From assembly GCA_964036045.1 (NCBI GenBank), contig OZ038378.1, positions 54,498,001-54,562,000 on the forward strand: a DNA stretch of 64,000 nucleotides, written 5' to 3'. This document shows, in pieces, positions 1 through 24,123 of the stretch; position 1 is the stretch's first letter, and every line of letters begins with the position of its first letter. Source of the stretch: Eutreptiella sp. 'Long Island Sound 2002' (lineage: Eukaryota > Protista > Euglenida). The position numbers were made by a program, and so were the translations under genes. The notes under the pieces are model-generated. The model saw nothing but the letters and a program-made list of their open reading frames with translations, ran no database searches and had not been told where the DNA came from.

Positions 1-150
1 ATGTACCTATGTGGACAACAACCCGTTATGTCAAGGATCCCACCGAAAGCAACATTACCATTGCGCGTCGCTTTCATTGGGTGCACATCACTGCTATGGT
101 GGCGTAGTCACCGATCACTGCTCCCGTCATCAACACTCGACAACAATGTA

Positions 151-220
151 CCCTTCGTGAACGGCCGTTAAGTGGCCGTTTGAATAATTGCGTGAATTTC
201 ACGTGAATTTACCCAAATTT
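151..220 (+). repeat. Left TIR of element A
   Basis: Inverted match to 4255-4316: 12 bp perfect, then imperfect. Confidence 0.85.
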
Positions 221-407
221 TGAGGTTTTTGGGGGGAAATGCCATATTCTTGGTTCATTTCAAGGGCTTTGAGGGGCCAAAATTCCTCCCCTAGCTTTGT
301 TACGCATCATCCAATGAAAGTCCCGCCCCAAAAGCATGCATCATGACCGCACCGTGCCCAAAACGAGAGGTGCCGGAACCCGGCAAGCCTGTAGCCGATT
401 CGCAGCC

Positions 408-490
408 GTGAATTCACGCGAATTCGTACGAAATTCGCACGAATTTCGTACGAATTTCGTACGAATTTCACGTGAATTCACGTGATTTTA
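408..490. repeat. Element A palindromic array A1, downstream of the transposase
   Basis: Tandem 11-bp units GAAATTCGTAC/GAATTTCGTAC with flanking GTGAATTCAC motifs. Confidence 0.9.
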
Positions 491-598
491 CACAAATGTT
501 AACCGTGTGCACCCCCTGATTTGTACTCACACCCCTAGTAAGCCCCCCAGCATGCACCCTGGTCACGGGCAACAATGGTCTGGGTTCGTAAGGTCATC

Positions 599-2362
599 TC
601 ATGTCCGTCTCTTGCGGCACCAGAACCGCCGCTGTAGAGTCTGAAGGTGCTGCATGTCGGTTAGAAGCCGTCTTCTTGTGCGGCTTGCATACGTTTGTAC
701 ACTTATGGGCCCTTGCCCATGTTGAGCCCTTTTGGTCGCATCCCACCCATGCGACCAAAGGCTATCGTCAATGGTGTGGCTGTCCACAACCACTTGCACC
801 CCTAGTCTCCCCCGGAGGAGGCTTAGGCCCCCGCTGTTGCGCAACATGCGCTTCAGCCTCCGGTGACTTCCCTCCGTGGCAAAGCAGGAGAACTTTGACA
901 AGATTCTCCACTTCTTTGCAAAACAATACATGTGGTCGATCCAAAGATGCGTCCACAGAAGTTTGCCCCACTGGAGCTCATTGTGGGCAGCGCCCATGGC
1001 TATGCTACGGTTCCGGAGCCGCCCCAAGTCGGCCCTGGAGAACCATGCGGAACGCCACGCGTATACACACATGCTTGCAAAATTCTCCCACCACGTTTTG
1101 CACACCGACTCCCAACTTTTTCCCCCTACTTGATGCTGCCTGACACTAGGCTGCTCTGGGCAAGCATCTATTATCTTCTCCCAACCCCTATTGCGCATGA
1201 AATGGATGGCAGCAGCACACTCCATCCTCACCTTCCCCTTGCTGTTTGCCTTGTCATTGTTTAATGAGGCACGGGTGCAAGTTCGTGCAGCAAGCCGTGC
1301 CTCATCTAGAACCGGTTGCAGCATGGTGCGTGCCACAGTGGCCGGTGCCTTCCTTGTCAATTGTACAACTAGGTCCCGTGTCCCGTTGACTGCACACAAC
1401 AGGACACGAAGGACCCCATGGAGGCCATAATCAGGCACTCGCCTATCACTCGTAATGGTCCTATATATAGCATTTATGGCAACGGCTGGTTCCCAGTTGC
1501 CGTCTATCGCACTTGCTGTGCCGAAGGTAGCAAGGCACACAGCACGGTTACGCATGCAGACCCAACACACAGTGGCACCAGGGGATTTTGCCTTCCAGTT
1601 TTGGCAGCCCGCCATGAGCACCTGTGCCTTACGATCTGCACACACAAAAAAAAGGGACTGCCTATCGTTCCCTGCCGTATCCTTAAAACTTACGGTTGCG
1701 GCCTTGCGCAACTCATCATCAAAATCAATTTCCTCGGAGGCCGCGTAGATGGTCTCCCACTTTTCACTGCCCCCTAGTAGCCACCAACTAGATAGTTGGT
1801 TGGGATTGGCGGTGCCACCAAGCGTGAAATGGACGTACGAGGCCTCGTGCCTCGATGTACCGTCCACTGCAATAGGCAACCAATGCAGCCGTCGGTCCCC
1901 GGGCTGCATGATGGCCGAGGGTGGGGGTGGTCGACACTTGAATAGGTGGCCGATGCGGTCAGGTAGGTAGCAGGCCGCACCATTGATGGCCATGTCGTCA
2001 CCCGTATAGGCAGTGAACGCCCGGGACTCCGGCAACGCTAGCCGCCGAAGCATGCCGTACACCTGGTCCCATACCACACCGTACGTCATGCTCCCCACTG
2101 GGTACCGGGACTCTCTCCTAGAGAGGTGCAATGACCGGATCCTCCACACGGCCATAATCAACCTCTCCTCCTGGGCGGGCTCGGGCTGGACGGTGGCTAC
2201 AATTTTTGTTTCGGGGGTAAGCACTATTTGCCCCGTGTCGGGCAGGTACTTGACGGTGTAGGGTGCTGCAAGCTCCTTGGTAACAACCTCCTGGAGCTCT
2301 TGTAGGTGCCGCCGTCGTGTACGTTCCGCTACCAGATGGAATGGCTCCTTGGGCCGTGGCAT
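599..2362 (-). CDS. RAG1/Transib-like DDE transposase, intact 587-aa ORF
   Basis: Motifs occur in RAG1-core order: IAVDG (first D), CADRK...G...CWVC (second D plus CxxC), DYGLH, THLWIDH (HxxxxH), then E in ATEGSH exactly 20 residues after the second H, as in RAG1 H942-E962. No stops; lies between TIRs. Confidence 0.85.
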   Translation of the reverse strand: MPRPKEPFHLVAERTRRRHLQELQEVVTKELAAPYTVKYLPDTGQIVLTPETKIVATVQPEPAQEERLIMAVWRIRSLHLSRRESRYPVGSMTYGVVWDQVYGMLRRLALPESRAFTAYTGDDMAINGAACYLPDRIGHLFKCRPPPPSAIMQPGDRRLHWLPIAVDGTSRHEASYVHFTLGGTANPNQLSSWWLLGGSEKWETIYAASEEIDFDDELRKAATVSFKDTAGNDRQSLFFVCADRKAQVLMAGCQNWKAKSPGATVCWVCMRNRAVCLATFGTASAIDGNWEPAVAINAIYRTITSDRRVPDYGLHGVLRVLLCAVNGTRDLVVQLTRKAPATVARTMLQPVLDEARLAARTCTRASLNNDKANSKGKVRMECAAAIHFMRNRGWEKIIDACPEQPSVRQHQVGGKSWESVCKTWWENFASMCVYAWRSAWFSRADLGRLRNRSIAMGAAHNELQWGKLLWTHLWIDHMYCFAKKWRILSKFSCFATEGSHRRLKRMLRNSGGLSLLRGRLGVQVVVDSHTIDDSLWSHGWDATKRAQHGQGPISVQTYASRTRRRLLTDMQHLQTLQRRFWCRKRRT

Positions 2363-2469
2363 GGTGTGAGATACAGGACCTGTTGAACGGGCAGGCAGTC
2401 ATCGCAAAGTTTCTACCATCCCCCTCCCGCAGACAACTCTCTCTACTGTGATTCGCATGCAATGAAAAG

Positions 2470-2655
2470 AAATTCACATAGATTCGCACGAAATTCGTAC
2501 GAAATTCGTACGAATTTCGTACGAATTTCGTGCGAATTTCACGTGAATAGAAATGTGTGAATATTCTAAAAATGTGAAATTCGTACGAAATTCGTACGAA
2601 ATTCGTACGAATTTCGTACGAACTTCGTACGAATTTCGTGCGAATTTCACATGAC
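2470..2655. repeat. Element A doubled palindromic array A2, upstream of the transposase
   Basis: 2483-2536 is a perfect 54-bp palindrome of 11-bp units. A second, similar array follows at about 2577-2650. Confidence 0.9.
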
Positions 2656-2959
2656 TGTCACAGAATTTCTGCCAAAGCCTCATCCTTCTGCCCTCGTTGA
2701 CCCTCACAAAGCAAGCTCAGGATGGTGCTCATGGGCTATCACACACCCAGTCCAGTGGCTGTCATTCCGGCTGTCACTCAGCCAGCAATGTAACACGTCA
2801 GGGGGCATAGCATACCCCAAATAAAATACAAACAGTTCCGCAGAAAAAATCGCAAACAGGTCAGGGGGCACACCGTACCCCAATTAATGTACAAACAGTG
2901 CTGCAGAAAATTTCGCACAGTGGGGGGGGAGTACCCCACATATCGGTCAAACTGCCCAG

Positions 2960-3914
2960 CGCAGGATCCTTGGCCTGCTCCTCACTCCGCGCGGCGTTGA
3001 AAAGGAGCTCAAAATTCTTTGCGACGACTTTTTCGTCGCCGCTGCCCCACGCCTTCATCACCTTGTTCCACCCCACCTCACAATCCCGTGCCTCCACAAG
3101 CCCCCGAAGCACAATGTAGCCGTTCCCATCAACAAAGTTGAGGGGCGGCTGAGAGGGGCCAACCCTGTCGGGGGCGGGGTCAGGGCTGCCCGTCACCCCA
3201 TGAGGGGGGTCGGGAAGTGGTTCGGTGCGGAGGGGGGGTTCACTCGAAATGAAGGGGGGGGCGCATGTGGCACGACGGTACCATTGCAAAGATGTTGTGC
3301 TATAGAAGGTGGGGTGGGTGACGTCGGGGACGTGCACCTGGGGGGGGATGGTTGGATGGAAAGGGGCGACGCCCAAATCATCCCACCACCGGGGGTTGGC
3401 AAGATGCCAAGACAAGGGGAAAAAAGAGTGGTCTGCTGGTGCACCTACAGCAAGATCCTGCAGGCACACCATATCGCAGTGGGGGGGGGGGGGTGTGGAC
3501 GAGGTTAGTGGTGGGGTACACCTGGAGGTGGGCGTCCTTAGGCTTCCCCACAGGGTTATTCCTCATCGAGTTGAGGAGCTGGTCAACACTGGAGGGGAGA
3601 GGGGTTAGATGGAGAAATTTGAGGGTGGGGAGTTGGTGGCGCAGTTCCCTCCACAGGGTTGTGGCCCATCCCCTCCCCCCGAGGTAGCTGTTGCGGGTGG
3701 GGCTGCGCATGTCGATGTGGATGACATCGGGGGAGGGGTCGAGGGAGGCTGCCCAGCCCACGAGGTCATCCACCCCCAGTGCCTCTGACTCGTACGTTGC
3801 CTCCTCCAAATGATGGTGGGCAACGGGGAGGGCTTGGTAGTGGGCGAGGGTGTCGGCTGCGGGGTCGGGGCGCGAGGCCAGGCTTGCGAGTTGAGACATA
3901 GTCTGCTGCGACAT
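2960..3914 (-). pseudogene. Element A cargo gene: unknown N-terminal domain plus the start of a PhyH-like 2OG-Fe(II) dioxygenase; frameshifted and 3'-truncated
   Basis: ORFs 3378..4052 and 2861..3472 join near the poly-G run at about 3480. FVDGNGYIVLRGLVEARDCE resembles the PhyH N-terminal motif and aligns with element B LRGAVEAKECE...LLSNAHSREE..DP.L. The catalytic HxD...H half is absent. Confidence 0.65.
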
Positions 3915-3979
3915 TGTTAAAAGAGAAGAACGCGAGGGCTTTGAGAGCTGTAACAAAGCGAAAGAGTGGAAAGGAGGGT

Positions 3980-4130
3980 AAATTCGTACGAAATTCGTAC
4001 GAAATTCGTACGAATTTCGTACGAATTCGTACGAAATTCGTGCGAATTTCACATTCTCGTGAATCTGTGAATCTAGCGTGAATTTCTGCGTGTATTTAGG
4101 TGCGTGAATTTCACATTCACGCGAATCTCA
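3980..4130. repeat. Element A palindromic array A3, upstream of the cargo gene
   Basis: AAATTCGTACG x3, then AATTTCGTACG units, then GTGAAT motifs. Confidence 0.9.
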
Positions 4131-4254
4131 CCAAATGTGTTAAACCATGCGGGGACTTTAAACCTCTAAATTGCACCTATTTGTGGCATCTTACTTTGGG
4201 CGAAGGTAGCACGACAAAAGCACGCGATAGCACCAAGTTACGAGCAAAACACAG

Positions 4255-4316
4255 CAAAATTGGGTGAAATTCACGGTACCGTGAATCTCGGATTCAAACG
4301 GCCGGTTCACGAAGGG
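4255..4316 (-). repeat. Right TIR of element A
   Basis: Reverse complement of 151-220. Confidence 0.85.
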
Positions 4317-5899
4317 TACAAAAACTGCTCATAGGTCTCAAGATGGAGACTCAATGTGGAATGAAATATTGTTACCCTGCATTGCCCCCCAATGTCCTGT
4401 GGGTCGAGAAGAAAGGTTTCCTTCTTGCGCCCTCACCACTTCTTGGGTTGTTCTTGTTTTTGTTGTTATTGTTGTCGTCCCTGTTGTTGTTCGGGTCTTT
4501 ATTCAACTCAAGTGCTCAGTTTGGTGTAACCGCAATGCAATTTGATTCTTTCGGCCCCTTGTCACCGAAAGTTCCCACTTAAAACGGAGGTTTTGGGGTG
4601 GGCAAGCACGTTGTATTTTAATTCTCTGATTTTTTTCCTCGTAGAGGGAGGTCTTTTGTCCGGACCCAATTCTTGGAACATGCAGCTACAAAGATGGTTC
4701 ACGTGTACGGTCATTTTGTCCCCAATGCGTCCTAGATTGTTGCCTCTATGGCCCCGAATGAGGTCGATCCATGTTTGTAGGCTCTTGCTTATGACTTGAA
4801 CGCTCCACCTACTTTGCTTGTGAGTATGAGGCGATGTGAATGGTCTAGAACACGGCGTTGCGAGCGGTTGTACCGCTCTGGGCCAACGATGAAAGAATTC
4901 GAGGGACAAAATGTGGCCAAGGAGATGTGGATCCTCAAGGAGGACCTCATGTGGTTCACGGGGATCCGAGCAATGTAGAGGTCGATTGTACGAGCGTATC
5001 ACGTGTTGGCCCCGCAACACAATTGCACCCCAAAGCCCGCGTGGAGATACGCGCCAGCATGATGAACGCTTCGATACCCAAAAAGCTAGCAATAAAAACA
5101 CAACCACCTAGCGCACACAAACACATTGCATTCGTCTTTCACAAGTTCCGGTGAAACGCCCCACAAGAACGCCGTATATTCCTTTCTACTCTCCTATCGG
5201 ACCCGCTGTTCCAGACTACATCTTAAGCGGCGCAAGTTGCCCACCTAGGTGAATTGGCGAAGAATACCCAAAATTGGCCACTTTGGCTTGTGTGAAATGT
5301 CAAGGCATTTTTTAACGTCTTGTGAGGTGTACCTCATTATGACCACCTGTGAACATGTTTTCGCGCTGCACTGCCTGTCCATACAAAACCAGCTGCTTGG
5401 GTGGGTTCAGTTTTTAGGGTGCACAACACACGTTTCCCTTTGTGCTATGCATAATTCGTTTCCTTGTGCCTGTCGTTTGGAATTTCAAAAAGAGCTTGGA
5501 ACCAGACACTTTTTGAAAATGCACCCCTGTCAAACACATTGTGTTGACGGATTTATGTATGGTTCCAGACAAACTAAGCAATTTGCACCATTTCAAGTAA
5601 GGTTTCAACGGCTGTCCATCTCGAGTGTCGAACATCATCTTTCAGCCCCCTTGATATTGCAGAGGTGTCTTGTTCTACACACTTCAGTCTAAGTTCGCCA
5701 TTTCGAATACACATTCAACACACATGGATGGCGTCTACTTCCAGACTCTGTCCACCAATTTTCTGGTTGTTGCGCACTGATGTTACGTTACCGTTGAGTG
5801 TTTTGTTTAGTCTAACTCTGTTCGCCCGCTGATGAGCGAGGCACTGGGTACGGTAGCAGATCCCTTTGGTCTCCTGCGTGATTTCTTGCGAGGAGCTAA

Positions 5900-6134
5900 G
5901 TATGGTACACATATGGACTTGATGGATGCGGGATGACGAGCTTGGGGCAGCAATGCTTGTAGACGTCTGTGCACAAATGAGGGCCAACCGACGAACAAGA
6001 TGTGGTATAAGCACATTGGCTGCAGCGCATCGGCAATTCACCCTGGCCAAGGTGGTATGGAGTGTTTGCACACCACGTGTATACAATGTGGCAATTGTGC
6101 GGGAACATGGCTCTCCCAGAGGAGAAGGTTTTTA
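5900..6134 (+). pseudogene. 5' part of a decayed DUF6589/Academ-like transposase interrupted by element B
   Basis: The frame of ORF 5926 (...REHGSPRGEGFY) continues in frame into 13637 (IVGPRKAASRG...) once element B and one 2-bp duplication are removed. Confidence 0.45.
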
Positions 6135-6247
6135 CCTGCGGCTCACTTGGAAATGTGAAGTTGGGGCTCAGTTGGGGCTAAAACGGCTCATTTGGGGCTA
6201 CGTGCTGTTTTTCAAGGGGTTTAACCGGGGGAGTTTCTTTTTTTCGA

Positions 6248-6420
6248 CGGCTCAGTTGACTGAGCACCCCGACTGAGCCGTCACTGAGCCGTCACTAAGC
6301 CGGCTCACTTAGCTCTCACTTAGCTCTCACTGAGCGCTCACTGAGCGCGCCAAATGGCTCAGTGAGCGCTCAGTGAGCGCTCGCTGAGAGCTAATTGGGG
6401 GCTCACTCGGGGCTCACTTA
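6248..6420. repeat. Element B array B1
   Basis: CTCACTGAGCGCTCACTGAGC - short spacer - GCTCAGTGAGCGCTCAGTGAG stem-loop of 11-bp units. Confidence 0.9.
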
Positions 6421-6449
6421 ACATGCACGGGCACAATTCTTCCATCATA

Positions 6450-8010
6450 AGCACTTACTTGGTCCTTTGTCGCAATGCACGTTCAACAATCCTCCTCACC
6501 ATGTTCTCTCTCCCCTTCCTCTGGCACCGGGCACGTGACCAAGTCGTGCACTGTCATTGGAACCCCCTTTGCTGGTCACAGCCCTACTCTCCACCTCCCA
6601 ACCTTCCTTGCGGAGGTTATCATCTAGCGTGTGGTTATCCACCACACACTGCAAGCCCGACCTATCGTTCAGCAAGCTGACCCCCCCCCACTATTCCTAA
6701 GCAGCCGTTTCAGTCGCACATGGCTGCCCTCCAATGCAAAGCAACTAAACTTTGCAATGGTCCCCCACCGTGCAACATACGCATACATGTGGTCAACCCA
6801 CATGTGCGTCCACAAGTTCTTCTCCAATCCCAGGTCAAGGTGCCTTGCCCCCATGGTCAGTTGGCGTTGCAGCAAGGAACGTTGCTCTGCACCACTCAGA
6901 AAGTCGTCCTTCCAGGCCACCTCGGCCATGGCCGCAAATCCCACCACTCCGTGCACACATCAACCCGTGGGCTGCCCCCCACTTGATGGTTCCCGATCAC
7001 CGGTGCAACCAGCTGCAACAGTGGGCCCCACAGCCGGGCCTCGACAAAGTGCGAAGCAGCCCCCAACTCCATGCGCACTTGTCCTTTGGCATTTGCCTTG
7101 TCCGGCCCCACTTTCCAGGCCGCATTGTGCGGGCCACTTTCCGTGCCCCTTTTAGAACCCCTAGCACCATGGTGGCCGCACTCTTCCTAGATACTCCTCC
7201 ATGGGTCACGAGCACTCGCACAATTCCACTGACCCCCGCAATGGCAACACGCATGACTCCATGCGCACCGAAGTCAGGAACGCGGCGGTCCTCCGGGATG
7301 TCACGAAACACCCCGGTCAGACGTACATGGCCCTTAATTCCTTCCAGGGCAACCTCTTGTCCTCCGAACTTGGGCAATACCGTTTCACGGTTTGCGCCGC
7401 AGCAGTGGCACACCATGGCCCCGGGGCTCTTCTTCGTGAAGCCGTCCCCGCCGGCCAGCATGATGTGGGCCTTGCCATCGGCCCAGACGAAGAATAGGGG
7501 GCTGCGTGCCACCCCATCCGCATGCGGCAGTTGCAGGGCCGTAGCAGCGCGGAGCTGAGTATCGAAGTCACACTCCGATTGCACGCTGTGGACCGTGGCC
7601 CACATCTCGCTACCCTCAAACAGCTGGCAAGTTGTGTGGGCCCACAACCCGGTGCAGCCACTACACAGTGCACGTAGGCCCGATTCCAGCGGTTGGTGCC
7701 GTCAACGCCGATGGTCACCCTGGCGTTGCGCTGCACGCCCGGTTGCAAGGCTTCCGGTGTGCGTACGGCAGGCGCTTCATAGAGCAGGGCTAGCCGCTCA
7801 GCAATATTGCAAGACGCCCATTGCATTTCATACTCCCCCTCAAGGATACAAACCAGCTGGCTAGCAGGTTGGCTGAGATGCTTCACCCACGGGGCCACGT
7901 CGGCCCAGCTAACGGTGCTGTCCAGGTCAGGCAGCAGGTGGCATTTTGTGTAGCTCCTGTGGTATAGGTGTAGTGCCACATGCAGTCCCCGTGCTTGCGG
8001 CACAATTATC
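6450..8010 (-). pseudogene. RAG1/Transib-like transposase of element B, frameshifted
   Basis: Fragments are collinear with the A transposase: IGVDGTNR (ORF 7317..8003), FFVWADGKA...SPGAMVCHCC and PDFGAHGV (6997..7647), WTHMWVDH...KFSCFALEGSHVRLKRLLRNSGG (6669..6956), then VVDNHTLDD. Confidence 0.85.
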
Positions 8011-8480
8011 TCTGCTCATATCTCTTTGCTATCCCCCCCACCTGTTTCCCCTTGAATGTTGTCCCTTTCTAGCCTCCCCCCCCCTTGCCCCTACAGGATT
8101 CACACTCTTTGTCGGGGTGGGGTAGTGGGGTTGCACCAAGGTGTTTGTCCCATCCCCCCCCCCCTGGGGATGCCGCCAGGGTGTTTGTCCCGTCATACCC
8201 CCCCCGGGGATGCCGCCCGGGTGTTTGTTCCATCATACCCCCCCCCCCCCCCCGGCAGTGTCTCATCCTTCCCCGTCATAGCCACTCCCATTGCCACCTT
8301 TGATGCCCCCCTCCCCCCGGTTGATGCCGTAATATGGGCTGCACCCCCCCCCCCACCCCACAGCCATGGCACACACCCTATTTGCAGTCCCTGGTGGTAG
8401 GTGGCACATCCCCCCCACACCCTCTGCCCACAACCACCAGTTTGTGGCGGCAAACAATTGGAGGGCCCAGCCATCCGCCC

Positions 8481-8605
8481 GACTGAGAGCTCACTGAGCC
8501 GTTTGGCGCGCTCAGTGAGCGCTCAGTGAGCGCGCCAAATGGCGCAGTGAGCGCTCAGTGAGCTCAATGAGCGCCCAGTGAGCTCTCAGTTACCTCTCAG
8601 TCACT
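8481..8605. repeat. Element B array B2
   Basis: GCTCACTGAGC/GCTCAGTGAGC units around TTTGGCGC and GCGCCAAA spacers, upstream of the transposase. Confidence 0.9.
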
Positions 8606-8679
8606 GCACACCTAAAGACAGGCACTACACAGGCACCACACAAGAGGCCAATACGTGTTACAAAAAGACTGTTTGCTGT

Positions 8680-8930
8680 CTCAACATACCACAGGGGCCA
8701 GATCTGGCCCTTCTCCTGCAAGTGTTGTTGAACACAGGCCCATAACAGGGCTGAAAGTGGTGGCCCCTGGCCAGCTTGAAAAAAAGGCGCAACATACCAC
8801 AGGGGCCAGATTTGGCCCTGTTCTTGAACACAGGCTCCCAACAAGGGTGAAAGTGGTGGCCCCTGGCCTGCTTGAAAAAAGGCCGCACAACAGAGCTGAA
8901 TGTGGTGGCCCCTGGCCTGCTTGAAAAGTT
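8680..8930 (+). repeat. ~116-bp tandem duplication inside element B
   Basis: CATACCACAGGGGCCAGAT...GTGGTGGCCCCTGGCC.GCTTGAAAA occurs about 2.5 times. Confidence 0.7.
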
Positions 8931-9351
8931 TTCAGCTCCGTGAAACAGTTATTTTCAAATTAACATACAACTGCAATTGGTACACGGCCATAATTACGGC
9001 ACATTGACCTGTGAAAAAAAGGCACACAGCAGGGCCCAAGAAGTGCACAGCACGCTGCAATCTGTGGCCCTAGGCCCCCCAGAAGAAATTTCAACACCAT
9101 GAAGTGCTCAACAATAATATATACCATACATATATACGAACCACATAGCGGGGGTCCAGCGGCTACCACAGCGCCGCAGTTCCAGGGAGAAAACCCGGAC
9201 TGCCAACCACGGGATCTGGCTCCCAGCCAGGCTGCCGAGCAGCCGCCACCACATCCGACCGATACCAGCGCTCGGCGTTCTGCAGGCGGGATGCCACTTC
9301 CACCACAACCTTCGGCAGGCTGTGCACGCTCAGTTCCGGCATCGTGGTTGT

Positions 9352-10800
9352 TCAAGCGAGCCCCGCAATGGTCTGCAGCTGCTGGCACGACGACTTGGCG
9401 TCGGCCATCCGCCGCGTGGCCAAGTGGGTGTACGCCAACAGTCCCGATGCCAGGAATTGCATGGATTGCGCGCTGTAGGTTGCGGGGGGTGCAGCCGGAA
9501 CCCCTGACTGGGAGGGGGATGCAGCCCCCGGCCCAGATTCAGGGGGCTTGAAGCCCTTGGACCGCTGCAGCACCTCCGGGCGTGCCTCACTGCCAGCCCG
9601 TTGGCGCTCAGAGTCCACGAGCTGGACCTGCAGGTCGTCCCGCTGCCGCTTGACCGTGTCCAGCTCCTCCTTGAGACGGGAGGCTGCTTCCGCTGCCAGA
9701 CGGGCAGCATCCCGCTCCTGGCGGAACTGGTCACGGTCACGGCATGCCTCCCGGTACACGGTCATGGGCACGGTACCCGGTAACCCAGGCTCACGAAGGG
9801 GGCTCCCCAGAGCCGCCTTTTGTGGTGTGGCTGCATTTCCCTTGCCCACCAGCATTTTTGGGGGGGGGGTGCTGTCCTTGGCTGCCCGCTTTTTCGCTTT
9901 CCCGACACCACTGCGGGCACTCGGATCACTGCGGGCGCCTGCACTGCGGGCGCCTTCACTCTTCCCCCCCTCCGTCACCTCGCCATCACTGACCACCTTT
10001 GGGTCGATGACGCCCCCCCCCCCCCCCCCCAGAGCGCTGCCACGGGAGCTGGCGACGTGGCCACGCATGGCGTGCCAAGCCTCCGAGAAAAACCCCTCCC
10101 CCTGCACTTCCCATGACGCCACGTGCTTAAAAGCAATTGAGCCAGCGCGGGCCAGCAACCCCCCCTCCTCCGTCCCCACGGCTAGGTCCAAGCACCAGTG
10201 TTTGGACCCCAGCCGGTAAGCAAAGCGGGCTACAAAAAAACCCCCCTTCCCTGCCAAAAGCCCACAATCCTCGGTGACGGTCACCCTGCACGGCAGGTGC
10301 ATTTGGGTGGGCGTGGTTGTCTGCGGGGCGGTGCACGCGTGGAGGGTGACGCTCCAATACCACCTCTCGGTGGAGTGCCGCGGTACCCCCTTCACGTTAA
10401 CCGTCCTATTGAGGAGGTACGCCGGTGCGGGCTGCTTGTTGAACGGGGCAATTTAGAGCCCGAAGTAGCCCACGCGTACATCACTGGCCCGGGCTGCCTG
10501 CACCTGGGGGAAGGGGACCGGGGACCCGATGGCCAGGTCGGTGAGTGATGGGCCCACCGGCCCCCGACCCTTGTCAACCGCCGCTGCCCTCTCGTCCCCG
10601 GCTCTCACCATCGCGGGCTCTGCTTCCGATGCCCCCGGCACCGGCTCCTTCGTCACTAACGCCAGTTGCTGTTGCCCTCCAAGCGGTGGTCGTGATGAAC
10701 TGCAGGCACCTTTGCCGGGCGGCGCGAACGTTACCGGACGTTGACTCCGTGTTTTGCTGCCGTGTGCATCAACCAAAGGCTCGTGCAGGGGGAATTGAGC
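9352..10800 (-). pseudogene. Element B middle gene: beta-rich domain, K/G-rich linker, coiled coil; one in-frame stop
   Basis: ORFs 10453..10875 and 9352..10395 share a frame and are separated by one TAA. A coiled coil (RDRDQFRQERDAARLAAEAASRLKEELDTVKRQRDDLQVQL) lies near the C-terminus. The gene is bounded by arrays B3 and B2. Function not recognised. Confidence 0.55.
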
Positions 10801-10900
10801 CTGCAAATGTGGGGGGGGGGGGGGGGGACTCCAAAAGTACCAGTTTCGATAAAGATGCAAACGGCAGCAAAGCACTGCAGCGGCCTGGTCCCGGGTTCCA

Positions 10901-10990
10901 CCTCACTGAGAGCTCACTGAGCCGTCAGCGAGAGCTAATTGGGCTCACTCAGCGCTCACTGAGCGCCAAACGGCTCAGTCATCTCTCAGC
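10901..10990. repeat. Element B array B3
   Basis: CTCACTGAG/GCTCAGT units with a GCGCCAAACGG spacer. Confidence 0.88.
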
Positions 10991-11349
10991 TGCACCTCCA
11001 GACCGGCAACTACAATTGGTGGCAGAATGCTGAAGCCGCCTCAGCCCAGCCCCATGCAGGCCATACACAGGGCCCATACAGGCCCCCATACAGGCCCGGT
11101 AAAGGCCAGCGTCAAACTAGCACGGCCTGTGCAGGAGGCCCACGCGCTGGCCGCCTTGTGCACATGTTAAGCCAACTCGTGGGGGACCTTGTGCACATGT
11201 TAAGCCCGCAAGTGGGGCATTACACGCATAACACACAAAGAACCCCGTGCCAGCCCACAGCCCCACAGGCCCGCAGCCCCGAACCCAGCTTTCCAAACAC
11301 CCTGGTGCACCCCACCACCACCCAGTCTCGCCCCCTACCAATATTCCCC

Positions 11350-13202
11350 CTGACACCCCGGTGTGAATCCTGCAGGGGAGGGGGAGAAGGGAGTAAGACC
11401 GTGCCGCTGCAGATGGAGCGCATCAAAAGCAGGACCTCGGCGCCCGCATCGCTCCTTGTACAGCGCTTCTCCGGCCCGCGATGCGAGGAGAAGTCAAGCA
11501 GCAAAGCCTGTTGTGCAGAGATGGGGCAGAAGGATGGGGCCCAATATTGCTGCAGCATGGCGGCCTCCCTGAATCCACTGTTACCCAGGTTGAGCCATGA
11601 TGGCCCGCTTGTCTTAGGACGTCGCCTTACTGCACGTACACGTGGCACATGGGGTCGGCGGCGCCCAAGGCAGGCCTGGCCAGCAGCAGCGGGTGGCATG
11701 GGCAGCCGGGGCCTGACGGACCCATAGGGGCCAGCCAGTCGTCCAGCTGCTCAAACTGCGGCAGACCGACCGCGCCCTGCAGCCCCTCGCCAAAGGCGAA
11801 GTACTGCCCCTAGTGGCCGAGAGCCCTGGGGTTGGGCAGCGGCCCGTCGCCCCGTGGCCGTGAAGCCAGCTCATCCTTGGCCCATTGCAGAGGGTCAACG
11901 ATGAACCGTTCCACGTCCACCCACTTGTGACGCTCGTCGGGGGTGAGGAAGCGGAAGAGAACAAACTGCTTCCCCACCCCCGGCAGCGCGGCGATAACCC
12001 GATGTCTCAGCGTGGAGGCAAAGAGAACCATGTCCCCAGGCTGAAACTCGAAGGTCTCGACCCGCAGAGCGTCATGGTCTCCCAGGTGGCTGCCCAAGTG
12101 CACCTCCAAATGATGCTTGTCCGAGAGGACAAGCATCATTGAGAGATGCCCGGGCAGGTCACCCATGCTAGGGAGCGTACCTGGCAACTGACCAACGTCA
12201 GTATGCCAGGTCTGCTCCCTAGCATCTTCCCCGGCGGCAATTGCCGACCACTGCGTTGGGAAGATACCCCTCATCTCGGGCCACCGAGCACTGCACTGCT
12301 GACTAGCCCGTTGCAAGGGGTCCCTTCCCAACACAGAGATAAGCTTGCCGGGCCGCGTACCCTAGCGCCGTGGCAGTTTGGGATCAGCCAAGCACTCCTC
12401 GCGAGAGTGTGCATTGGACAGCAGATCCCAAATTGCATCCGGCTGGGTACCGCAGGAGTCGACGAGAATGCGGTACCAGTTCTCGCACTCCTTGGCCTCT
12501 ACCGCCCCCCTCAACGCCCAACTCATCCGACTCAAGGTCATAAGCCGGGAGTTCATGTGAGAACACCGGGGCAGCCAAGGAGATATAGGGGGGAGAGGAG
12601 GCGGCACCGCGGAGTAACACGGACTTCTTGGTCCTGTACAGGGCTGGGGTGGTGTAGTCGGGCACCACATGGCATCACTCGGGAATGATGGGACAAGCCG
12701 AAAGGCTTTCCCACCATTCCCCTGATACCACCCCAACCCCGAAAGGCAGGGCCTCAAGGAGTCCCTTCTTGGGTGCAACGTGGCTGACACCAAGATCTGC
12801 AGTCCAACCGTGCTGCAGGTCTTTGGTGTCATGAACCCGTGTCCCGAACTCCTGGGGGGTACCGATCAGCTTTTCTAAGGACTGCTGCAACAAATCTTGG
12901 ACAACAGCCACAGGAAAGCGGAAGCGTACGGCACGAAGAGCTGGATGCACCTGGCGCCACATTTGGTTGCACCGGTGCATCCAGGTCTTTCCAAGAAGGG
13001 TCACATCGGACACGGTGGTGTGGACCACTTATGGGGAACAGGCAGGGAGCTGCTGGGCCCACGGCTTCAAAGGCTCTAGGTCCGTCGAAGGCACCCCCGG
13101 GTACCCTGCCTCTGTGAAAGTGGTAGGTACCCGGGGGCGACTAAGCAAAGACGTGAGAGCTTTTGAAGCCGCTCATTCCAGGATTAGGGCGACATTAGAC
13201 AT
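11350..13202 (-). pseudogene. Element B cargo gene: unknown N-terminal domain, PhyH-like 2OG-Fe(II) dioxygenase, Cys-containing tail
   Basis: ORF 11810..12334 has QTWHTD (HxD) and FQPGDMVLFASTLRH (distal His). Upstream frames align with the A cargo gene (PWAQQL..VVH vs GWAASL..VIH; WWESL..P..HVVPDYTTP.LY vs WWDDL..P..HVPDVTHP.FY). Several stops and frameshifts. Confidence 0.75.
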
Positions 13203-13295
13203 GGTGTGAAAGAGAGGACCTATGGGAGCGGGAAGGAATGGATGGGTAGGCGGATAGGGGGGCGGAGGAGAGGCGGAAAGTTGGGGGGAACCCTC

Positions 13296-13446
13296 TGAGT
13301 GAGCCCCCAAGTAGCTCTCACTGAGCGCTCACTGGGCGCTCACTGAGCCATTTGGCGCGCTCAGTGAGCGCTCAGTGAGCGGTCAGTGAGCCGGCTCAGT
13401 GACGGCTCAGTGACGGCTCACTCAGGCGCTCAATCAACTGAGCCGT
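13296..13446. repeat. Element B array B4
   Basis: Near mirror image of B1, upstream of the cargo gene. Confidence 0.9.
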
Positions 13447-13636
13447 CACCAAAAAAAGTACCCCCCCCCCTGGACCTTGACCAAGTGAGTATCTAAAACT
13501 TCCAAAAACATTGAATGCACATTACCTAGCATGCAAAAAGCACAACAAACAAGCACAAAGACATCGCAATGCACAACTGAGCCCCAAATGAGCCCCAACT
13601 TCACATTTCCACTTAACCACCAGTGAGCCGCAGGCA

Positions 13637-18100: not shown

Positions 18101-19740
18101 CCATTGTCAATCCTAAACTCAAGATTGCGCCTGTCGTGAGCTGCCTGACTATGAACGTCGGTTCGGATGCCCCCCAGAGGGGGTGGCTGATAGTGAGAAG
18201 CTCGAGGGGGTCATGCATGTAACAGGGATGGTGCATGGTACCCTCTTGCACTCCACTGTTACCAACATGCCATACTCCTGCATCATTGTCGAGCTGCCAA
18301 GGGGAGTTATGGAAGGCAGTGATGTTATGCAGAGCCGAAATTTCGTGTCTGAAACGCTTGTTCCTCTCCTTGGTGATGCCAGCGATGTCACGGGTGTGTT
18401 GGATGTTCTCGGAAGACTGCATGACAACGAGCATTTGACTACAACCCGTATTGGCTGCTTCATTTAGGGGTCGTTGACGCAACAGCGCTCAATGGGTTTC
18501 AGCGAGCTGTGGGTGATGTCAAAAATCCGTTGCCTAAGAAGGCATTCCTGCCAGTCGATGCCATTTGCTGCCAAAGTTTCCATCGGTGCATTCTAAAGTC
18601 AAATTGTTTACCTGGCTCTAGACACCCGAGACCAAAAACCCATTGGTGTGCCCATTATATCTACAGAGTTGTTTGGAACCAGACTGCAAGTGCCTAGAAA
18701 TAGATACCTCGGTTGCTGTTGAGCTGTGACTAGTGGTCGAAAACTCAATATTCCCTTGTGCAGGTGCCCCGATACTTTACTTTCTTTCGTGGCCCAATGG
18801 TTCAACAGATATGTACGGAGGTTGCGGATTCCATGATGCACCACTTGGCAGATGAAGTACCCATGGAAGCAAGCACCTTGTGCTTATTGGTTATTGATAG
18901 TTCTGTGAACGTGGCTCGCAGTCTGGCAATGCGAAGGCCTATGGCTATCAGTGTCGTCCTAGGTTTGCCAACTATGCAAGAGCCAGTGGCAAGCGTTGGG
19001 GGTCAAGTGTGTAGCAGTTTGCGGATCGCTGAAGGAGTGAACCCCATTTCGTGGTCTGGATTCTTGGAGAATTTTGGGAATGGATATCTTGTGGAACGTA
19101 GCCGTGTGCCTGAGAAGGCAGACGCGCAGCACGAGTCCGATGAGGAGCTGGAAACGGTGGGGTCCGTTTCCAAGGACACTATGGCAGGTGGCCACTGTAA
19201 TTTTGTGGCACCTTTGTTGTCCTTTTTGCTTCAATCAGGGCATGACTTTGGCAATGGTGCACATCATAGTCACAAATTTGGAACAACAGCTGGGACGCGT
19301 GCAGGTTCATAATGTCAGGGCCCTACTTGGTGCTGCTCTGTTGCACCTTGGGGTCAACGAGGGTGATGTACTTAGACGGAGCAAGCTTCCCCCCCCCAAA
19401 AAACAAATTGTACCCCCGTAAAAAATGCCACCAAGAAGTGGTCCTGAAAACATTGTGTGAAAGTAGTGGAATTGTAATGTCGTCAAGCGCGCGGACATTT
19501 CGGGTAATTGCTGTCATACGTGAAATATGTTGGCTCCTTGGAGGCAATACAACTTTGATGTTCACCGCTATAGAACATGACAAAAATAGTCTAATTTTGA
19601 GGCGCCACCCCCCAAAACAAATGCATGCGTGTTACCCTTGGCATAGCAAACGACGAACATTGTCATTGCACGTCCATTTGCAACTTGTGTTTTGAAATTG
19701 GTTCAGAGGACAGAGAATTATGGAGATTTGTTTGGAAACG

Positions 19741-19743
19741 CAT

Positions 19744-19774
<31 letters not shown>

Positions 19775-19780
19775 TATATA
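19741..19780. repeat. (CA)n/(TA)n microsatellite at the 5' junction of the LHC retrocopy
   Basis: Seen directly in the sequence. Confidence 0.9.
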
Positions 19781-19794
19781 AAGTAATGAGTTGG

Positions 19795-21975
19795 CCTGAT
19801 GTGCTGAATGGCCGCTGGGCTATGTTGGGTACACTCTGGTGCCTATTCCGAGAGGTGCTGCAAAAGTACACTGCTATCGACAATGGTGCCAGCAAAGGTG
19901 TGTGGTTTAGGGCTGGTGCCATGATCTTTGGGTCTGATGGCTTGAACTACACGGGTACCCCCGTGTTGGTGCGCGCCCAATCCATCCTTGCCGTGTTGGC
20001 CTGCCAAGTTGTCCAGATGGGTGCCATCGAGGCATACCGTGTGAACGGTGGTCCATTCGGTGGACGTGACCTTGATCTGGTGTACCCTAGTGGCAAGCGA
20101 TTTGACCCTTTGGGTTTGGCCGGCGACCCTGATGTGGCTGCCGAGTTGAAGGTGAAGAAGATCAGGAGCGGCCGTTTGGAGATGCTCTCCACGTTCGGCT
20201 ACTTCGTGCAGGCTGCTGTCTCCGGCCAGGGCCCTGTTGGGAAATGGGCCTCCCACATTGCTGATCCGTTTGCGGTGAACAGGGTGACCCTTGAGATTGC
20301 CGCCGCGTACGTGCCATCTGTTGCCATGTTGGCAGCTGCTAGGAAGAAGAAGGCCGCCGCCCCTAAGGTGGACTTGTCTAGCTGGTATGGCCCTGACTGC
20401 AAGCGGTGGTTGGGCCTTAACACTGCGGGCAGCTGCGTCACTTACTATTTGACCGGTGAGTACCTTGGTGTCTACGGTTGGAACAGCGCTGGGCTTGTAG
20501 CAGACCCCAAGACCGTCGAGTGCCTCCGCGAGGCTGAGGTGGTGCACGATCGCTGGCCTATGTTGGGTACTCTCTGGAGCCTGGCCCCCGAGCTGCTGCA
20601 GAAGTACACTGCCATCGACAATGGTGCCAGCAAAGTTGTGTGGTTCGAGGCTGATGCGATGATCTTCGAGTCTTATGGCTTGAACTACATGGGTGCCCCC
20701 GTGTTGGTGCGCGTGCATTCCATCCTTGCGGTGCTGGCCTGCCAAGTTGTGCTGATGGGTGCCATGGAGGCTTATCGTGTGAATGGTGGTCCATTCGGTG
20801 AACGTGACCTTGATCTTGTGTGCCCTGGTGGCAAGGGATTTGACGCTCCGGGTTTGGTCGGCGACCTTGATATGGCTGCCGAGCTGAAGGGGAAGGAGAT
20901 CAGGAGCAGCCGTTTGGTGATGCTCCCCATGTTCGGCTGCTACGTGCAAGGTGCCGACACCAGCCAGGGCCCTAGTGAGAACTGGGCGTCCCACATTGCA
21001 GATCCTTTTGCGGTGAACGGGATGACTCTTGAGATTGCCACCCAGTACACGCCATCCGTTGCCATATTCGCAGCTGCTGGGAAGAACAAGGCTGCCGCCC
21101 CCAAGGTGGATCTGTTTGGCTGGTATGGCCCTGATTGCAAGAAGTGGTGGGGTCCTGACCTTGCAAGCAGCTACGCCCCTTACTACTTGACCGGTGAGTA
21201 CCCTGATGACTACGGGTGGGACAACGCTGGGCTTGCAGCACACCCCAAAACCTTCAAGCGCCTCAGCGTGGCTGAGGTGCTGCACGATCGCTAGGCTATG
21301 TTGGGTACTCTCTAGTGCCTCAATGGTGCCAGCAAAGGTGTGTGGTTCAAGGCCGGTGCCATGATCTTCGGGTCTGGTGTCTTGAACTACACGGGTGCCC
21401 CCGTGTTGGTGCGCGCCCAGTCCATCCTTGCCGTGTTGGCCTGCCAAGTTGTGCAGATGGGTGCCATCGAGGCTTACTGTGTAAACAGTGGTCCATTCGG
21501 TGGACGTGTCCTTGATCTGGTGCACCCTGGTGGCAAGTGTTTTGACTCTTTGGGTTTGGCCGGCGACCTTGATGTGGCTGCCGAGTTGAAGGTGAAGGAG
21601 ATGGGGAACGGCCATTTGGCGATGCTCTCCATGTTCGGCTACTTCGTGTAGGCTGTTGTCACCGGCCAGGGCCCTGTTGGGAACGCGGCCTCCCACATTG
21701 TTGATCCATTTGGGATGAACAGGTTGACCCTTGAGATTGCCGCCCAGTACACGCCGTCTGTTGCCATGATCGCAGCCGCTGGGAAGAAGAAGGAGGCCGC
21801 CCCCAAAGTGGGTTTGTCTGGCTGGTATGGCCCTGACCGCAAGAAGCGGTTGGGCCCCAACACAGCGGACAACTACGTCCTTGACTACTTGAACGCTGAA
21901 TACCCTGGTGACTACGGGTGGGACAACGCTGGGCCTGCGGCAGGCCCCAAGGCCTTCGAGCCAGCACGTGGGTAG
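19795..21975 (+). pseudogene. Lhcb: Intronless, truncated LHCII (chlorophyll a/b-binding) polyprotein pseudogene, about three units plus part of a fourth
   Basis: Repeated WYGPD.K.WLGP, YLTGEYP.DYGW, EV.H.RW.MLG, FDPLGL and ELKVKE...RL.M motifs. Units start at about 20347, 21085 and 21787 (738-bp period; unit 3 has a 36-bp deletion) and are joined by PSVAM(L/I)AAA(G) linkers. TAG stops at 21292, 21313 and 21649. Confidence 0.92.
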
Positions 21976-21987
21976 CATCACCATCTT

Positions 21988-24123
<2,136 letters not shown>

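What the first reader, a model, noticed from the sequence alone, without database searches (positions are those of the whole stretch)
408..13446. Element-specific 11-bp odd-palindrome hairpin arrays mark every gene boundary
Seen: A has arrays at 408, 2470 and 3980; B has them at 6248, 8481, 10901 and 13296, always between genes and never inside them. The units differ (CGAA-W-TTCG+TA vs GCTCA-S-TGAGC) but the design is shared: about 11-bp period, a palindrome with one asymmetric central base, and that base flipping mid-array so the array folds back (2483-2536 is a perfect 54-bp palindrome). Related motifs occur in each element's own TIR. Inference: these are helically phased binding sites for an element protein, acting as promoters or insulators, or as internal recombination signals that make each gene a movable cassette.
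Basis: partly seen in the sequence, partly recalled or inferred. Interest (0 to 1): 0.88.

Follow-up and report, generated by a model that had tools for sequence, protein, structure and literature searches.

The report
Palindromic repeat modules bracket transposon genes
Two DNA transposons of a probable euglenid-like alga, whose transposase has the fold of the RAG1/Transib recombinase, carry a family-specific palindromic array of 11-bp units on each side of each gene; the arrays are real and resemble extended CACTA-type binding-site repeats, but their function is untested.

Summary
Element A (147-4320) and element B (6135-13634) carry arrays of 11-bp near-palindromic units at the stated places and nowhere else in the window. 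The full 15-base A pattern matches 37 times against 0.02 expected. Every array folds as a long hairpin (z -5 to -10.7).

New findings:
- A's 587-aa ORF has no Pfam hit, but its model (pLDDT 84.8) matches RAG1 core, Transib and ProtoRAG transposases (E 1e-10). It has the DDE, C-x2-C and H-x4-H pattern of the CACTA/Mirage/Chapaev/Transib clade.
- The target duplication is 2 bp.
- An intact 7-kb copy (L018) has three genes and six palindromic modules arranged 1-2-2-1, one on each side of every gene. Each 5' module lies 61-120 bp before the ATG.
- The window's A copy is a two-gene deletion derivative (1-2-1). B is an old copy with broken genes and decayed arrays.
- Related families, some from other metagenomes, use the same design with different units.
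- A half-unit also lies 6-15 nt from each terminus.

Best reading (about 0.4): binding-site arrays for an element-encoded protein, like CACTA subterminal repeats, extended to each gene boundary as start/stop modules. Hairpin signals and host-factor sites remain rivals. The recombination-cassette idea has little support. I file this as a new variant of a known kind.

The parts
147..4320 (-). Element A: a two-gene deletion derivative of a 7-kb three-gene transposon family. The genes are on the minus strand.
   Evidence: The 16-nt termini at 147-162 and 4305-4320 are inverted copies. The flanking dinucleotide AA stands on both sides. Full-length relatives are L018 and L014.
147..212 (.). A terminal inverted repeat, transposase-side arm, with two GTGAA-W-TTCAC-type units at 192-212 and the motif GTTAAGTGG.
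   Evidence: The arms are identical for 24 nt and coincide again at the unit 46-56 nt from each terminus.
408..490 (.). A array 1: a single palindromic module, 3' of the transposase gene.
   Evidence: z -9.6; module 432-478.
599..2362 (-). ORF3 of A: intact 587-aa transposase with a RAG1/Transib-like fold.
2470..2660. A array 2: a double module (2482-2548 and 2572-2652), upstream of the transposase ATG by 120 bp.
   Evidence: (z -9.5 and -10.7).
2792..2917 (.). 63-bp tandem repeat in the 3' region shared with other copies.
2861..3914 (-). ORF1 remnant of A. It is broken by one frame change and has lost its C-terminal part, together with the next modules and ORF2, through one deletion.
3976..4125 (.). 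A array 3: a single module at 3976-4053, followed by looser GTGAAT-type units, about 62 bp upstream of the ORF1 start.
   Evidence: (z -8.6).
4255..4320 (.). A terminal inverted repeat, ORF1-side arm.
6135..13634 (-). Element B: an old three-gene copy of a related family with the same gene order and four arrays. No intact target duplication remains.
6135..6200 (.). B terminal inverted repeat, transposase-side arm, with GGCTCA half-units at 11-bp steps.
6248..6420 (.). B array 1.
   Evidence: z -8.7.
6565..8003 (-). ORF3-like transposase gene of B. It is broken by at least four frame changes and is about 40% identical to A's.
8481..8601 (.). B array 2.
   Evidence: z -9.5.
9352..10875 (-). ORF2-like coiled-coil gene of B. 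It is 28-35% identical to ORF2 of the A family over about 120 residues. It is open in at least two pieces.
10901..10990 (.). B array 3.
   Evidence: z -5.2.
11660..13157 (-). ORF1-like gene of B. It is broken by at least one frame change and two in-frame stops. One piece gives a weak, sub-threshold 2OG-Fe(II) oxygenase hit.
13296..13446 (.). B array 4.
   Evidence: z -7.6.
13575..13634 (.). B terminal inverted repeat, ORF1-side arm. It carries about 10 extra bases that include GTTAAGTGG.

Best explanation
Each array is a palindromic module: a few copies of an oriented 11-bp unit followed by the same number of inverted copies. One module stands on each side of every gene of a three-gene cut-and-paste transposon. 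The gene order is ORF1 (unknown function), ORF2 (coiled coil), ORF3 (transposase with the RAG1/Transib fold, CMCT clade).

[quoted passage not shown] The best candidate is the poorly conserved, basic N-terminal part of the transposase, because the transposase is the only protein shared by all families that have such arrays. ORF1 or ORF2 could instead play the part of a TnpA-like binder.

The same protein would read the half-unit that lies 6-15 nt from each terminus. The arrays would then be the counterpart of the family-specific subterminal repeats of CACTA/En-Spm elements.

Here the design has been extended to every gene boundary. The bound module 61-120 bp upstream of each ATG would control the start of transcription. 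The module after each stop codon would act as a roadblock or terminator and shield the gene from read-through.

Shown: the anatomy, the transposase fold, the 2-bp duplication, the recurrence of the design in other families, and the relation of unit to terminus. Inferred: that a protein binds, which protein it is, and the transcriptional roles.
For: (1) The arrays are far beyond chance and confined to the elements.

(2) The intact copy L018 has six modules in a 1-2-2-1 pattern around three genes. The window's two-gene derivative has 1-2-1. The distance from 5' module to ATG is 61-120 bp.

(3) The number of units per array varies from 2 to 6 between copies. The 11-bp step and the single A-to-T switch do not vary.

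(4) The design recurs with other units:
- CGCGAA-S-TTCGCG with a C-to-G switch in a family 56% identical (L002).
- CGAAATTCG-type units on both sides of a 40-45% identical gene from another data set (L015).
- TTAGCG-YR-CGCTAA units upstream of a gene about 30% identical, from lake metagenomes (L010-L012 and L017).
- CGCGATAAC units around the genes of a further family (L001).
The nearer relatives share the GAA-N-TTC core and the farther ones do not.

(5) A half-unit lies next to each terminus: TTCGTGAA at 154-161 in A and GCGGCTCACT at 6138-6147 in B.

(6) The transposase belongs to the clade that includes CACTA (PMC12730594). CACTA subterminal repeats are family-specific and form palindromes. 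They are bound by TNPA, which blocks RNA polymerase and regulates the element both positively and negatively (PMC2613891). Transposases have been reported to act as sequence-specific transcriptional regulators of their own copies (bioRxiv 10.64898/2026.08.24.746577).

(7) In the dead copy B the arrays have decayed along with the genes: 66-82% matches against 90% for A's single arrays 1 and 3. This marks them as features of the element, not of the host.
Against: - No binding, occupancy or transcript data exist.
- No DNA-binding domain was identified in any of the three proteins.
- A homodimer on a palindromic site would not need the strict A-then-T (or C-then-G) order of the central bases. That order is more easily explained by selection for one long fold-back, or simply by descent from one inverted duplication.
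- Two relatives on short contigs show no array within about 340 bp of the gene (L016; the P0148 family is unclear).
- Some units contain hexamers of the kind that host factors bind.
- The co-variation of unit type with transposase lineage rests on only about six families.
Confidence: 0.4

Rival explanations
1. The modules act as nucleic-acid structures, not as protein sites. Each would extrude as a cruciform in DNA, or fold as a 25-40-bp hairpin in a transcript. Either form would mark transcript 3'-end formation, processing between cistrons, or insulation from read-through. This would resemble the hairpin rule of Mimiviridae, or 3' stem-loops in general.
For: All eight arrays fold as single long hairpins with z from -5 to -10.7. 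The ordered central bases (A then T; C then G) penalise pairing within a half and favour a single fold-back at the array centre. Outer variant units are mirrored across the module (2483-2492 against 2527-2536). A module follows every stop codon, and one precedes the first gene, where it could stop incoming read-through. In Mimiviridae, polyadenylation occurs at hairpin-forming palindromes that end the transcripts (PMC4402537). The stretches between the 5' modules and the ORF1 and ORF2 start codons are pyrimidine-rich, as expected for trans-splice acceptor regions if the host is a euglenozoan; that last step is inference.
Against: A hairpin needs only an inverted repeat. It does not need a strict 11-bp tandem unit, or a unit that echoes the element's terminus. 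Two modules at each internal boundary would be redundant for a single processing site. No transcripts were available.
Confidence: 0.25
2. The arrays are clusters of binding sites for host transcription factors. Each family would have recruited a different factor, and the clusters would serve as compact, orientation-free promoters or enhancers for each gene.
For: The 5' modules lie 61-120 bp upstream of each ATG. Palindromic units suit dimeric factors. The outer A units contain the hexamer that stands at 2541-2546, of the class bound by bHLH/bZIP factors (general knowledge). Unrelated accessory genes, and a piggyBac-like gene, are also flanked by their own element's arrays (L001).
Against: This reading does not explain the module after the last gene. 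It does not explain the half-unit beside each terminus, or why closely related families keep the same core while distant ones differ. The arrays decay in the dead copy, as would be expected under any element-level function.
Confidence: 0.15
3. The modules are internal recombination or pseudo-end signals that make each gene an exchangeable cassette.
For: Every gene has a module on each side, in the 1-2-2-1 pattern. Families differ in accessory gene content while keeping arrays of their own unit around each gene (L001: a 680-aa gene and a piggyBac-like gene).
Against: Only one of six deletion end-points in three derivatives lies at an array. The modules lack the outermost bases of the termini. 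The terminal arrays are whole palindromes, not half-arrays.
Confidence: 0.08
4. The arrays are neutral by-products: slippage-prone palindromic minisatellites that expand in non-coding parts of these elements.
For: The number of units varies between copies. Other tandem repeats of 40, 49 and 63 bp also fill the intergenic parts.
Against: The position, the module number per gene, the 11-bp step, the single switch of the central base and the link to the termini are all conserved across copies. The design also recurs with different units in families only 26-56% identical and in other data sets.
Confidence: 0.07

Closest known systems
Subterminal repeats of CACTA (En/Spm) transposons and their binding protein TNPA
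   Same: Both have a short, family-specific motif repeated in direct and inverted orientation, forming palindromes near both ends. In CACTA elements the motif is bound by an element-encoded protein that is needed in cis and trans, blocks RNA polymerase and regulates the element (PMC2613891). [quoted passage not shown] Both have a short target duplication and several proteins per element.
   Different: Here the units form exact head-to-tail 11-bp arrays with one orientation switch. Modules also stand between the internal genes, one on each side of every gene. There are no CACTA termini, no Pfam match to CACTA transposase domains, and the genes are separate rather than alternatively spliced. Binding has not been shown.
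Transib transposons, ProtoRAG and RAG1
   Same: Only these proteins match the model over its whole length (E 1e-10 to 3.5e-5, TM 0.33-0.60). They share the order D, D, C-x2-C, H, H-x4-H, E, and the E lies 20 residues after the second H. One arm of each TIR carries a motif displaced by about one helical turn.
   Different: No sequence-level match was found. The target duplication is 2 bp rather than 5 bp. The termini read 5'-TG...CA-3'. The element has three genes, no RAG2-like gene was seen, and gene-bracketing arrays are not described for Transib.
Hairpin rule of Mimiviridae transcripts
   Same: Hairpin-forming palindromes lie at nearly every gene boundary (PMC4402537).
   Different: Those are single palindromes in a cytoplasmic virus, cleaved by a viral enzyme. 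Here they are arrays of a repeated unit in a nuclear transposon, and the transposase has no viral kin in BFVD.
Phased repeat arrays bound cooperatively by small dimeric regulators on bacterial plasmids, and REP/BIME palindromes between bacterial genes (both from general knowledge, not tested here)
   Same: Short units at about one helical turn, in direct and inverted order, overlapping promoters. Palindromic units in alternating orientation at gene ends, linked to a transposase family.
   Different: These are bacterial systems. There is no homology, and the likeness is one of design only.
TET/JBP-carrying transposons of the CMCT and KDZ groups in fungi (PMC12730594)
   Same: Multi-gene DNA transposons of the same transposase clade that carry an accessory enzyme gene. 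ORF1-like pieces here give weak 2OG-Fe(II) oxygenase signals.
   Different: The signals are below threshold, and the intact ORF1 has no hit. No arrays of this kind are reported for the fungal elements.

Membership tests
CMCT clade of DDE transposons (CACTA/EnSpm, Mirage, Chapaev, Transib and kin; criteria as given in PMC12730594) | DDE transposase on an RNase H-like fold | tested here: met
   The model (pLDDT 84.8) matches RAG1, Transib and ProtoRAG over 520-690 columns. D167, D243 and E497 are kept in 16/17, 23/23 and 17/17 of the aligned relatives that cover them. The assignment of catalytic roles is by motif order, not by superposition.
CMCT clade of DDE transposons (CACTA/EnSpm, Mirage, Chapaev, Transib and kin; criteria as given in PMC12730594) | [quoted passage not shown] | tested here: met
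   C266-x2-C269 (kept in 21 and 23 of 25), H315 (25 of 25), H472-x4-H477 (16/18 and 17/17), and E497 lies 20 residues after H477.
CMCT clade of DDE transposons (CACTA/EnSpm, Mirage, Chapaev, Transib and kin; criteria as given in PMC12730594) | Target-site duplication of 2-5 bp | tested here: met
   The duplication is 2 bp: AC/AC in L013, checked against uninterrupted units of the 103-bp satellite it sits in, and AA/AA in L014, L018 and the window's A. B has none left.
CMCT clade of DDE transposons (CACTA/EnSpm, Mirage, Chapaev, Transib and kin; criteria as given in PMC12730594) | Termini 5'-CA...TG-3' (in most members) | tested here: not met
   A-type termini read 5'-TGTACCC...GGGTACA-3'. B reads 5'-CCTGCGG...CCGCAGG-3'.
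Transib superfamily proper | 5-bp target duplication (established knowledge; Kapitonov and Jurka 2005, cited in PMC12730594) | tested here: not met
   The duplication is 2 bp in four copies.
Transib superfamily proper | Sequence-level similarity to the Transib/RAG1 core | tested here: not met
   No Pfam hit, including the RAG1 families, for 25 relatives. A profile search against PDB sequences finds no RAG1 or Transib chain at E up to 10. The likeness is seen only at the level of fold.
Transib superfamily proper | Asymmetric TIR arms comparable to 12/23 signals | tested here: inconclusive
   One arm of A and one arm of B carry a motif displaced by about 10-11 bp and the string GTTAAGTGG. The arm concerned is the transposase side in A and the opposite side in B, and no heptamer-like end is present.
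CACTA/En-Spm superfamily | Transposase with the Pfam CACTA-type domains, and CACTA termini | tested here: not met
   No Pfam family at E up to 0.1. The termini differ.
CACTA/En-Spm superfamily | Family-specific subterminal repeated motifs able to form palindromes | tested here: met
   Terminal arrays lie at 408-490 and 3976-4125 in A and at 6248-6420 and 13296-13446 in B, with different units per family. Compare PMC2613891.
CACTA/En-Spm superfamily | A separate element-encoded protein that binds those motifs | not testable with these tools
   ORF1 and ORF2 have no recognisable domain other than a coiled coil and are unrelated to the transposase.
Hairpin-defined transcript ends (Mimiviridae type) | Transcript 3' ends fall at the palindromes | not testable with these tools
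   No transcript data for the source organism were within reach.

The most novel reading that the evidence does not exclude
The modules and an element-encoded binder would form a self-contained, family-specific gene-boundary system. A transposon would bring its own start/stop signals, so that each of its genes, and any gene it captures between two modules, is expressed independently of the host's transcription units. This would matter most in a host that may transcribe polycistronically. It would be a eukaryotic, transposon-borne counterpart of a cassette platform, built around a RAG1-fold transposase.
Probability: 0.12. Interest if true: 0.85.

Novelty: new variant of a known kind. Interest (0 to 1): 0.62.

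Why it matters
- It adds a large, unannotated lineage of RAG1/Transib-fold transposases. A profile search found 471 clusters at 50% identity, with no name and no Pfam family. Members occur in a phototrophic protist and in freshwater metagenomes, which bears on how widely the RAG1-like fold is spread.
- The lineage has a three-gene layout and a 2-bp duplication, which no described superfamily combines.
- Its cis-architecture is unusually legible: the same short unit marks both ends of every gene and the termini. Whatever reads the unit could therefore be identified from sequence co-variation and transcript maps alone.
- If the host is a euglenid, where promoters and terminators are barely known, these modules would be among the first candidate signals to test against expression data.

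Tried and rejected
- Pfam on all ORFs of A and B and on 25 transposase relatives gave no family. PDB sequence searches with the single protein and with the profile found nothing.
- The first structure model, from a shallow alignment, was useless (pLDDT 37.7). A deeper alignment of 50%-cluster representatives was needed.
- Rfam found nothing in the window.
- The BFVD fold search gave only a weak hAT hit, so there is no viral kinship.
- The JGI metagenome scan added only two loci.
- I looked for a 5-bp target duplication and for CA/CAC termini and found neither.
- I tested whether the 680-aa gene next to the CGCGATAAC arrays is an ORF1 homologue. It is not.
- I tested whether ORF1, ORF2 or that gene derive from the transposase. 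They do not.
- The 2OG-Fe(II) oxygenase hint did not hold for intact ORF1.
- The weak 11-bp array at 58510-58566 is not palindromic and has no transposase nearby.
- The P0148 family on 2-kb contigs could not be bounded, so I could not settle whether it has arrays.

Slips, which I own up to:
1. I stopped listing such places, and this report gives counts only.
3. One script passed on the consensus-unit column that TRF prints. I used it only as a label.

Full report
**1. The observation**

The window holds two transposon-like elements. Element A runs from 147 to 4320 and element B from 6135 to 13634. Tandem Repeats Finder reports 11-bp arrays at 411-489, 2482-2648 and 3980-4050 in A. In B it reports them at 6259-6418, 8508-8601, 10902-10966 and 13313-13432.

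Laid out in 11-base register, the A unit is the 10-bp perfect palindrome seen at, for example, 2494-2503, plus one base. That base is A in the first half of each array and T in the second half. The B unit is an 11-bp odd palindrome whose central base is C in the first half and G in the second, with a short spacer at the turn.

The stretch 2483-2536 is a perfect palindrome, and it extends to 56 nt at 2482-2537. The 15-base A pattern matches 37 times against 0.02 expected. The B unit matches 21 times against 1.07 expected. Every match lies in an array. All eight arrays fold as single long hairpins with z from -5.2 to -10.7.

A palindrome scan finds nothing comparable in the other 50 kb of the window except AT microsatellites. 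An unbiased scan of 155 kb of the same genome finds arrays of palindromic 10-11-bp units only at elements of this kind.

**2. What the elements are**

A's 587-aa ORF (599-2362, minus strand) has no Pfam or PDB sequence match. It has hundreds of near-identical copies on megabase contigs of one ENA assembly, ERZ25074135. A profile search of 1.84 billion representatives found 471 clusters, all unnamed. The full-length ones sit on 2-3-kb contigs from aquatic metagenomes and one Logan run.

With an alignment of these relatives the AlphaFold model reached pLDDT 84.8. Foldseek's first 49 PDB hits are all RAG1 core, HzTransib or amphioxus RAG-like transposase (E 1.6e-10 to 3.5e-5, TM up to 0.60). The next hit, Hermes, is far behind at 5e-3.

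The conserved residues are D167, D243, C266-x2-C269, H315, H472-x4-H477 and E497. They follow the pattern that defines the CACTA/Mirage/Chapaev/Transib clade and RAG1 (PMC12730594). BFVD gave no viral relative.

Four copies show a 2-bp target duplication. One of them (L013) sits in a 103-bp satellite whose uninterrupted units show the duplicated dinucleotide directly. The termini read 5'-TG...CA-3', which is not the clade's usual ends.

The elements therefore belong to that clade by fold and motifs. They fit neither Transib (5-bp duplication, sequence similarity) nor CACTA (termini, Pfam domains).

**3. Architecture**

An apparently intact copy, L018 6606-13635, has three genes on one strand:
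- ORF1: 677 aa, with no recognisable family.
- ORF2: 505 aa, coiled coil.
- ORF3: the transposase.

L018 has six palindromic modules, at 6871-6940, 8970-9036 plus 9064-9125, 11109-11189 plus 11213-11290, and 13290-13375. That is one module on each side of every gene. The 5' modules end 61-120 bp before the start codons. ORF1's frame runs about 25 codons into the module that follows it.

The window's A copy is a deletion derivative. It has lost the C-terminal part of ORF1, two modules and ORF2 in one deletion, and it has one frame change in what is left of ORF1. Its transposase ORF is open. It accordingly shows 1-2-1 modules for two genes.

B has the same gene order: ORF1-like, ORF2-like, then ORF3-like, at 30%, 28% and 40% identity, with four arrays. 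B is old. Its transposase gene has at least four frame changes, and its ORF1-like gene has at least one frame change and two stops. It has no target duplication left, and its arrays have decayed to 66-82% matches, against 90% in A's single arrays 1 and 3. Long homopolymer runs occur in both elements, so some frame changes may be assembly errors.

Between copies of A the number of units per array varies from 2 to 6. The 11-bp step and the single A-to-T switch are constant.

**4. Generality**

The same design with other units appears in related families:
- A family 56% identical uses CGCGAA-S-TTCGCG with a C-to-G switch, upstream and downstream of its transposase gene (L002).
- A gene 40-45% identical, from another data set, has CGAAATTCG-type arrays on both sides (L015).
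- A family about 30% identical, from lake metagenomes, has TTAGCG-YR-CGCTAA units upstream (L010-L012 and L017).
- In L001 a further family has CGCGATAAC arrays around a 680-aa gene and a distant transposase-like gene.
- Another family in L001 has GGTAAC/GTTACC arrays around a piggyBac-like gene and a RAG1-like fragment.

One relative shows no array within 340 bp (L016). Families close to A keep the GAA-N-TTC core and distant ones do not.

In both A and B a half-unit lies 6-15 nt from each terminus (154-161 in A; 6138-6147 in B). Unit-like repeats also fill the TIRs (192-212, 4266-4276, 6163-6200).

**5. How it most likely works**

The closest known thing is the subterminal repeat region of CACTA elements. 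Those are family-specific motifs in direct and inverted order that form palindromes. They are bound by the element's TNPA protein, which is needed for movement, blocks RNA polymerase and regulates the element both ways (PMC2613891). A recent preprint reports that transposases themselves act as sequence-specific transcriptional regulators of their own copies.

I therefore read the modules as phased binding-site arrays for an element-encoded protein. These would serve at the ends as subterminal sites and at each gene as start and stop modules. The transposase N-terminus is the best candidate binder, for three reasons:
- The transposase is the only protein common to all array-bearing families.
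- Its first 30-75 residues do not align between families.
- It begins with a basic helix.

None of this has been shown, and my confidence is about 0.4.

The main rival is that the fold-back itself is the signal, in DNA or RNA (0.25). The ordered central bases favour one long hairpin, and a palindrome follows every gene, as in Mimiviridae (PMC4402537). Host-factor sites (0.15), recombination cassettes (0.08; only one of six deletion end-points lies at an array) and neutral minisatellites (0.07) follow.

**6. Host**

A 524-aa ORF at 19720-21294 holds three LHCII-type chlorophyll a/b units in one frame. Its named relatives are green plants and chlorarachniophytes. An LHCII polyprotein points to a euglenophyte (general knowledge), but this is not proven. 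A green-plastid dinoflagellate is not excluded. Canonical GT-AG introns occur nearby in the same genome.

**7. Verdict**

The finding is real and its regularity is striking. It is best filed as a new variant of a known kind: subterminal-repeat-type arrays of a CMCT-clade transposon, extended to bracket every gene, in a previously unannotated RAG1-fold lineage. Function remains inferred.

I took no step of the kind barred by the operators and I propose none.

Noticed in passing
window 19720-21294 (+): A 524-aa open frame with three chlorophyll a/b-binding (LHCII-type) units in a row, that is, a light-harvesting polyprotein gene. It is the best clue to the host (euglenophyte-like). A 715-aa ORF on the opposite strand (19843-21990) is probably spurious.
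   Followed up: partly
window 44542-44981; L013 1500-1797 and 7206-7600: A 103-bp satellite recurs in this genome. In L013 an A-type element sits inside it, which let me read the 2-bp target duplication against uninterrupted units.
   Followed up: yes
L001 1250-1440 and 3641-3775: A further family carries 12-bp CGCGATAAC units with inverted copies mid-array. They flank a 680-aa gene (weak, sub-threshold PhyH-type dioxygenase hit) and a distant, N-terminally short transposase-like gene at 124-1122.
   Followed up: partly
L001 9031-9245, 9842-10033, 11870-12140 and 13635-13741: GGTAAC/GTTACC motif arrays lie around a piggyBac-like transposase gene (10136-11776) and a RAG1-like fragment (12239-13447). 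One of these arrays lies in what looks like a GT-AG intron. Beyond them is a different array of TTGGCGCGCCAA-type palindromes. Several families with their own units are packed side by side.
   Followed up: partly
window 11810-12334 (-); L001 1454-3496 (-): There are weak hits to 2OG-Fe(II) oxygenase families (E 0.012 and 0.034, below the curated cut-offs). Intact ORF1 (P0334) gives none. This is of interest because fungal transposons of the same clade carry TET/JBP dioxygenases (PMC12730594), but it is unresolved here.
   Followed up: partly
window 147-212 and 4255-4320; 6135-6200 and 13575-13634: The two arms of each TIR are not equal. One arm carries about 10-11 extra or displaced bases that include GTTAAGTGG, on the transposase side in A and on the other side in B. 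A one-turn asymmetry would be of interest for a RAG1-like enzyme, but the evidence is thin.
   Followed up: partly
window 2792-2917, 8136-8246 and 8728-8927: Other tandem repeats (63, 40 and 49 bp) fill the 3' and intergenic parts of both elements. The 63-bp repeat is shared by other A copies.
   Followed up: no
both elements and elsewhere in the window: There are many homopolymer runs of 16-19 C or G. In a long-read assembly their length is error-prone, so some apparent frame changes may not be real.
   Followed up: no
window 58510-58566: A weak 11-bp array (five copies) that is not palindromic and has no transposase relic nearby. It is probably unrelated.
   Followed up: partly
window 1-146: The window opens with a string resembling the first bases of the A terminus (ATGTACC...), directly upstream of element A. 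It may be the edge of another copy.
   Followed up: no
L018 7001-7060, window 3935-3975 and L001 3600-3640: A short leader motif (GGCTTTGAGAGCT as it stands on the gene strand's complement) recurs between the 5' module and the start codon of ORF1-type and unrelated first genes in different families.
   Followed up: no
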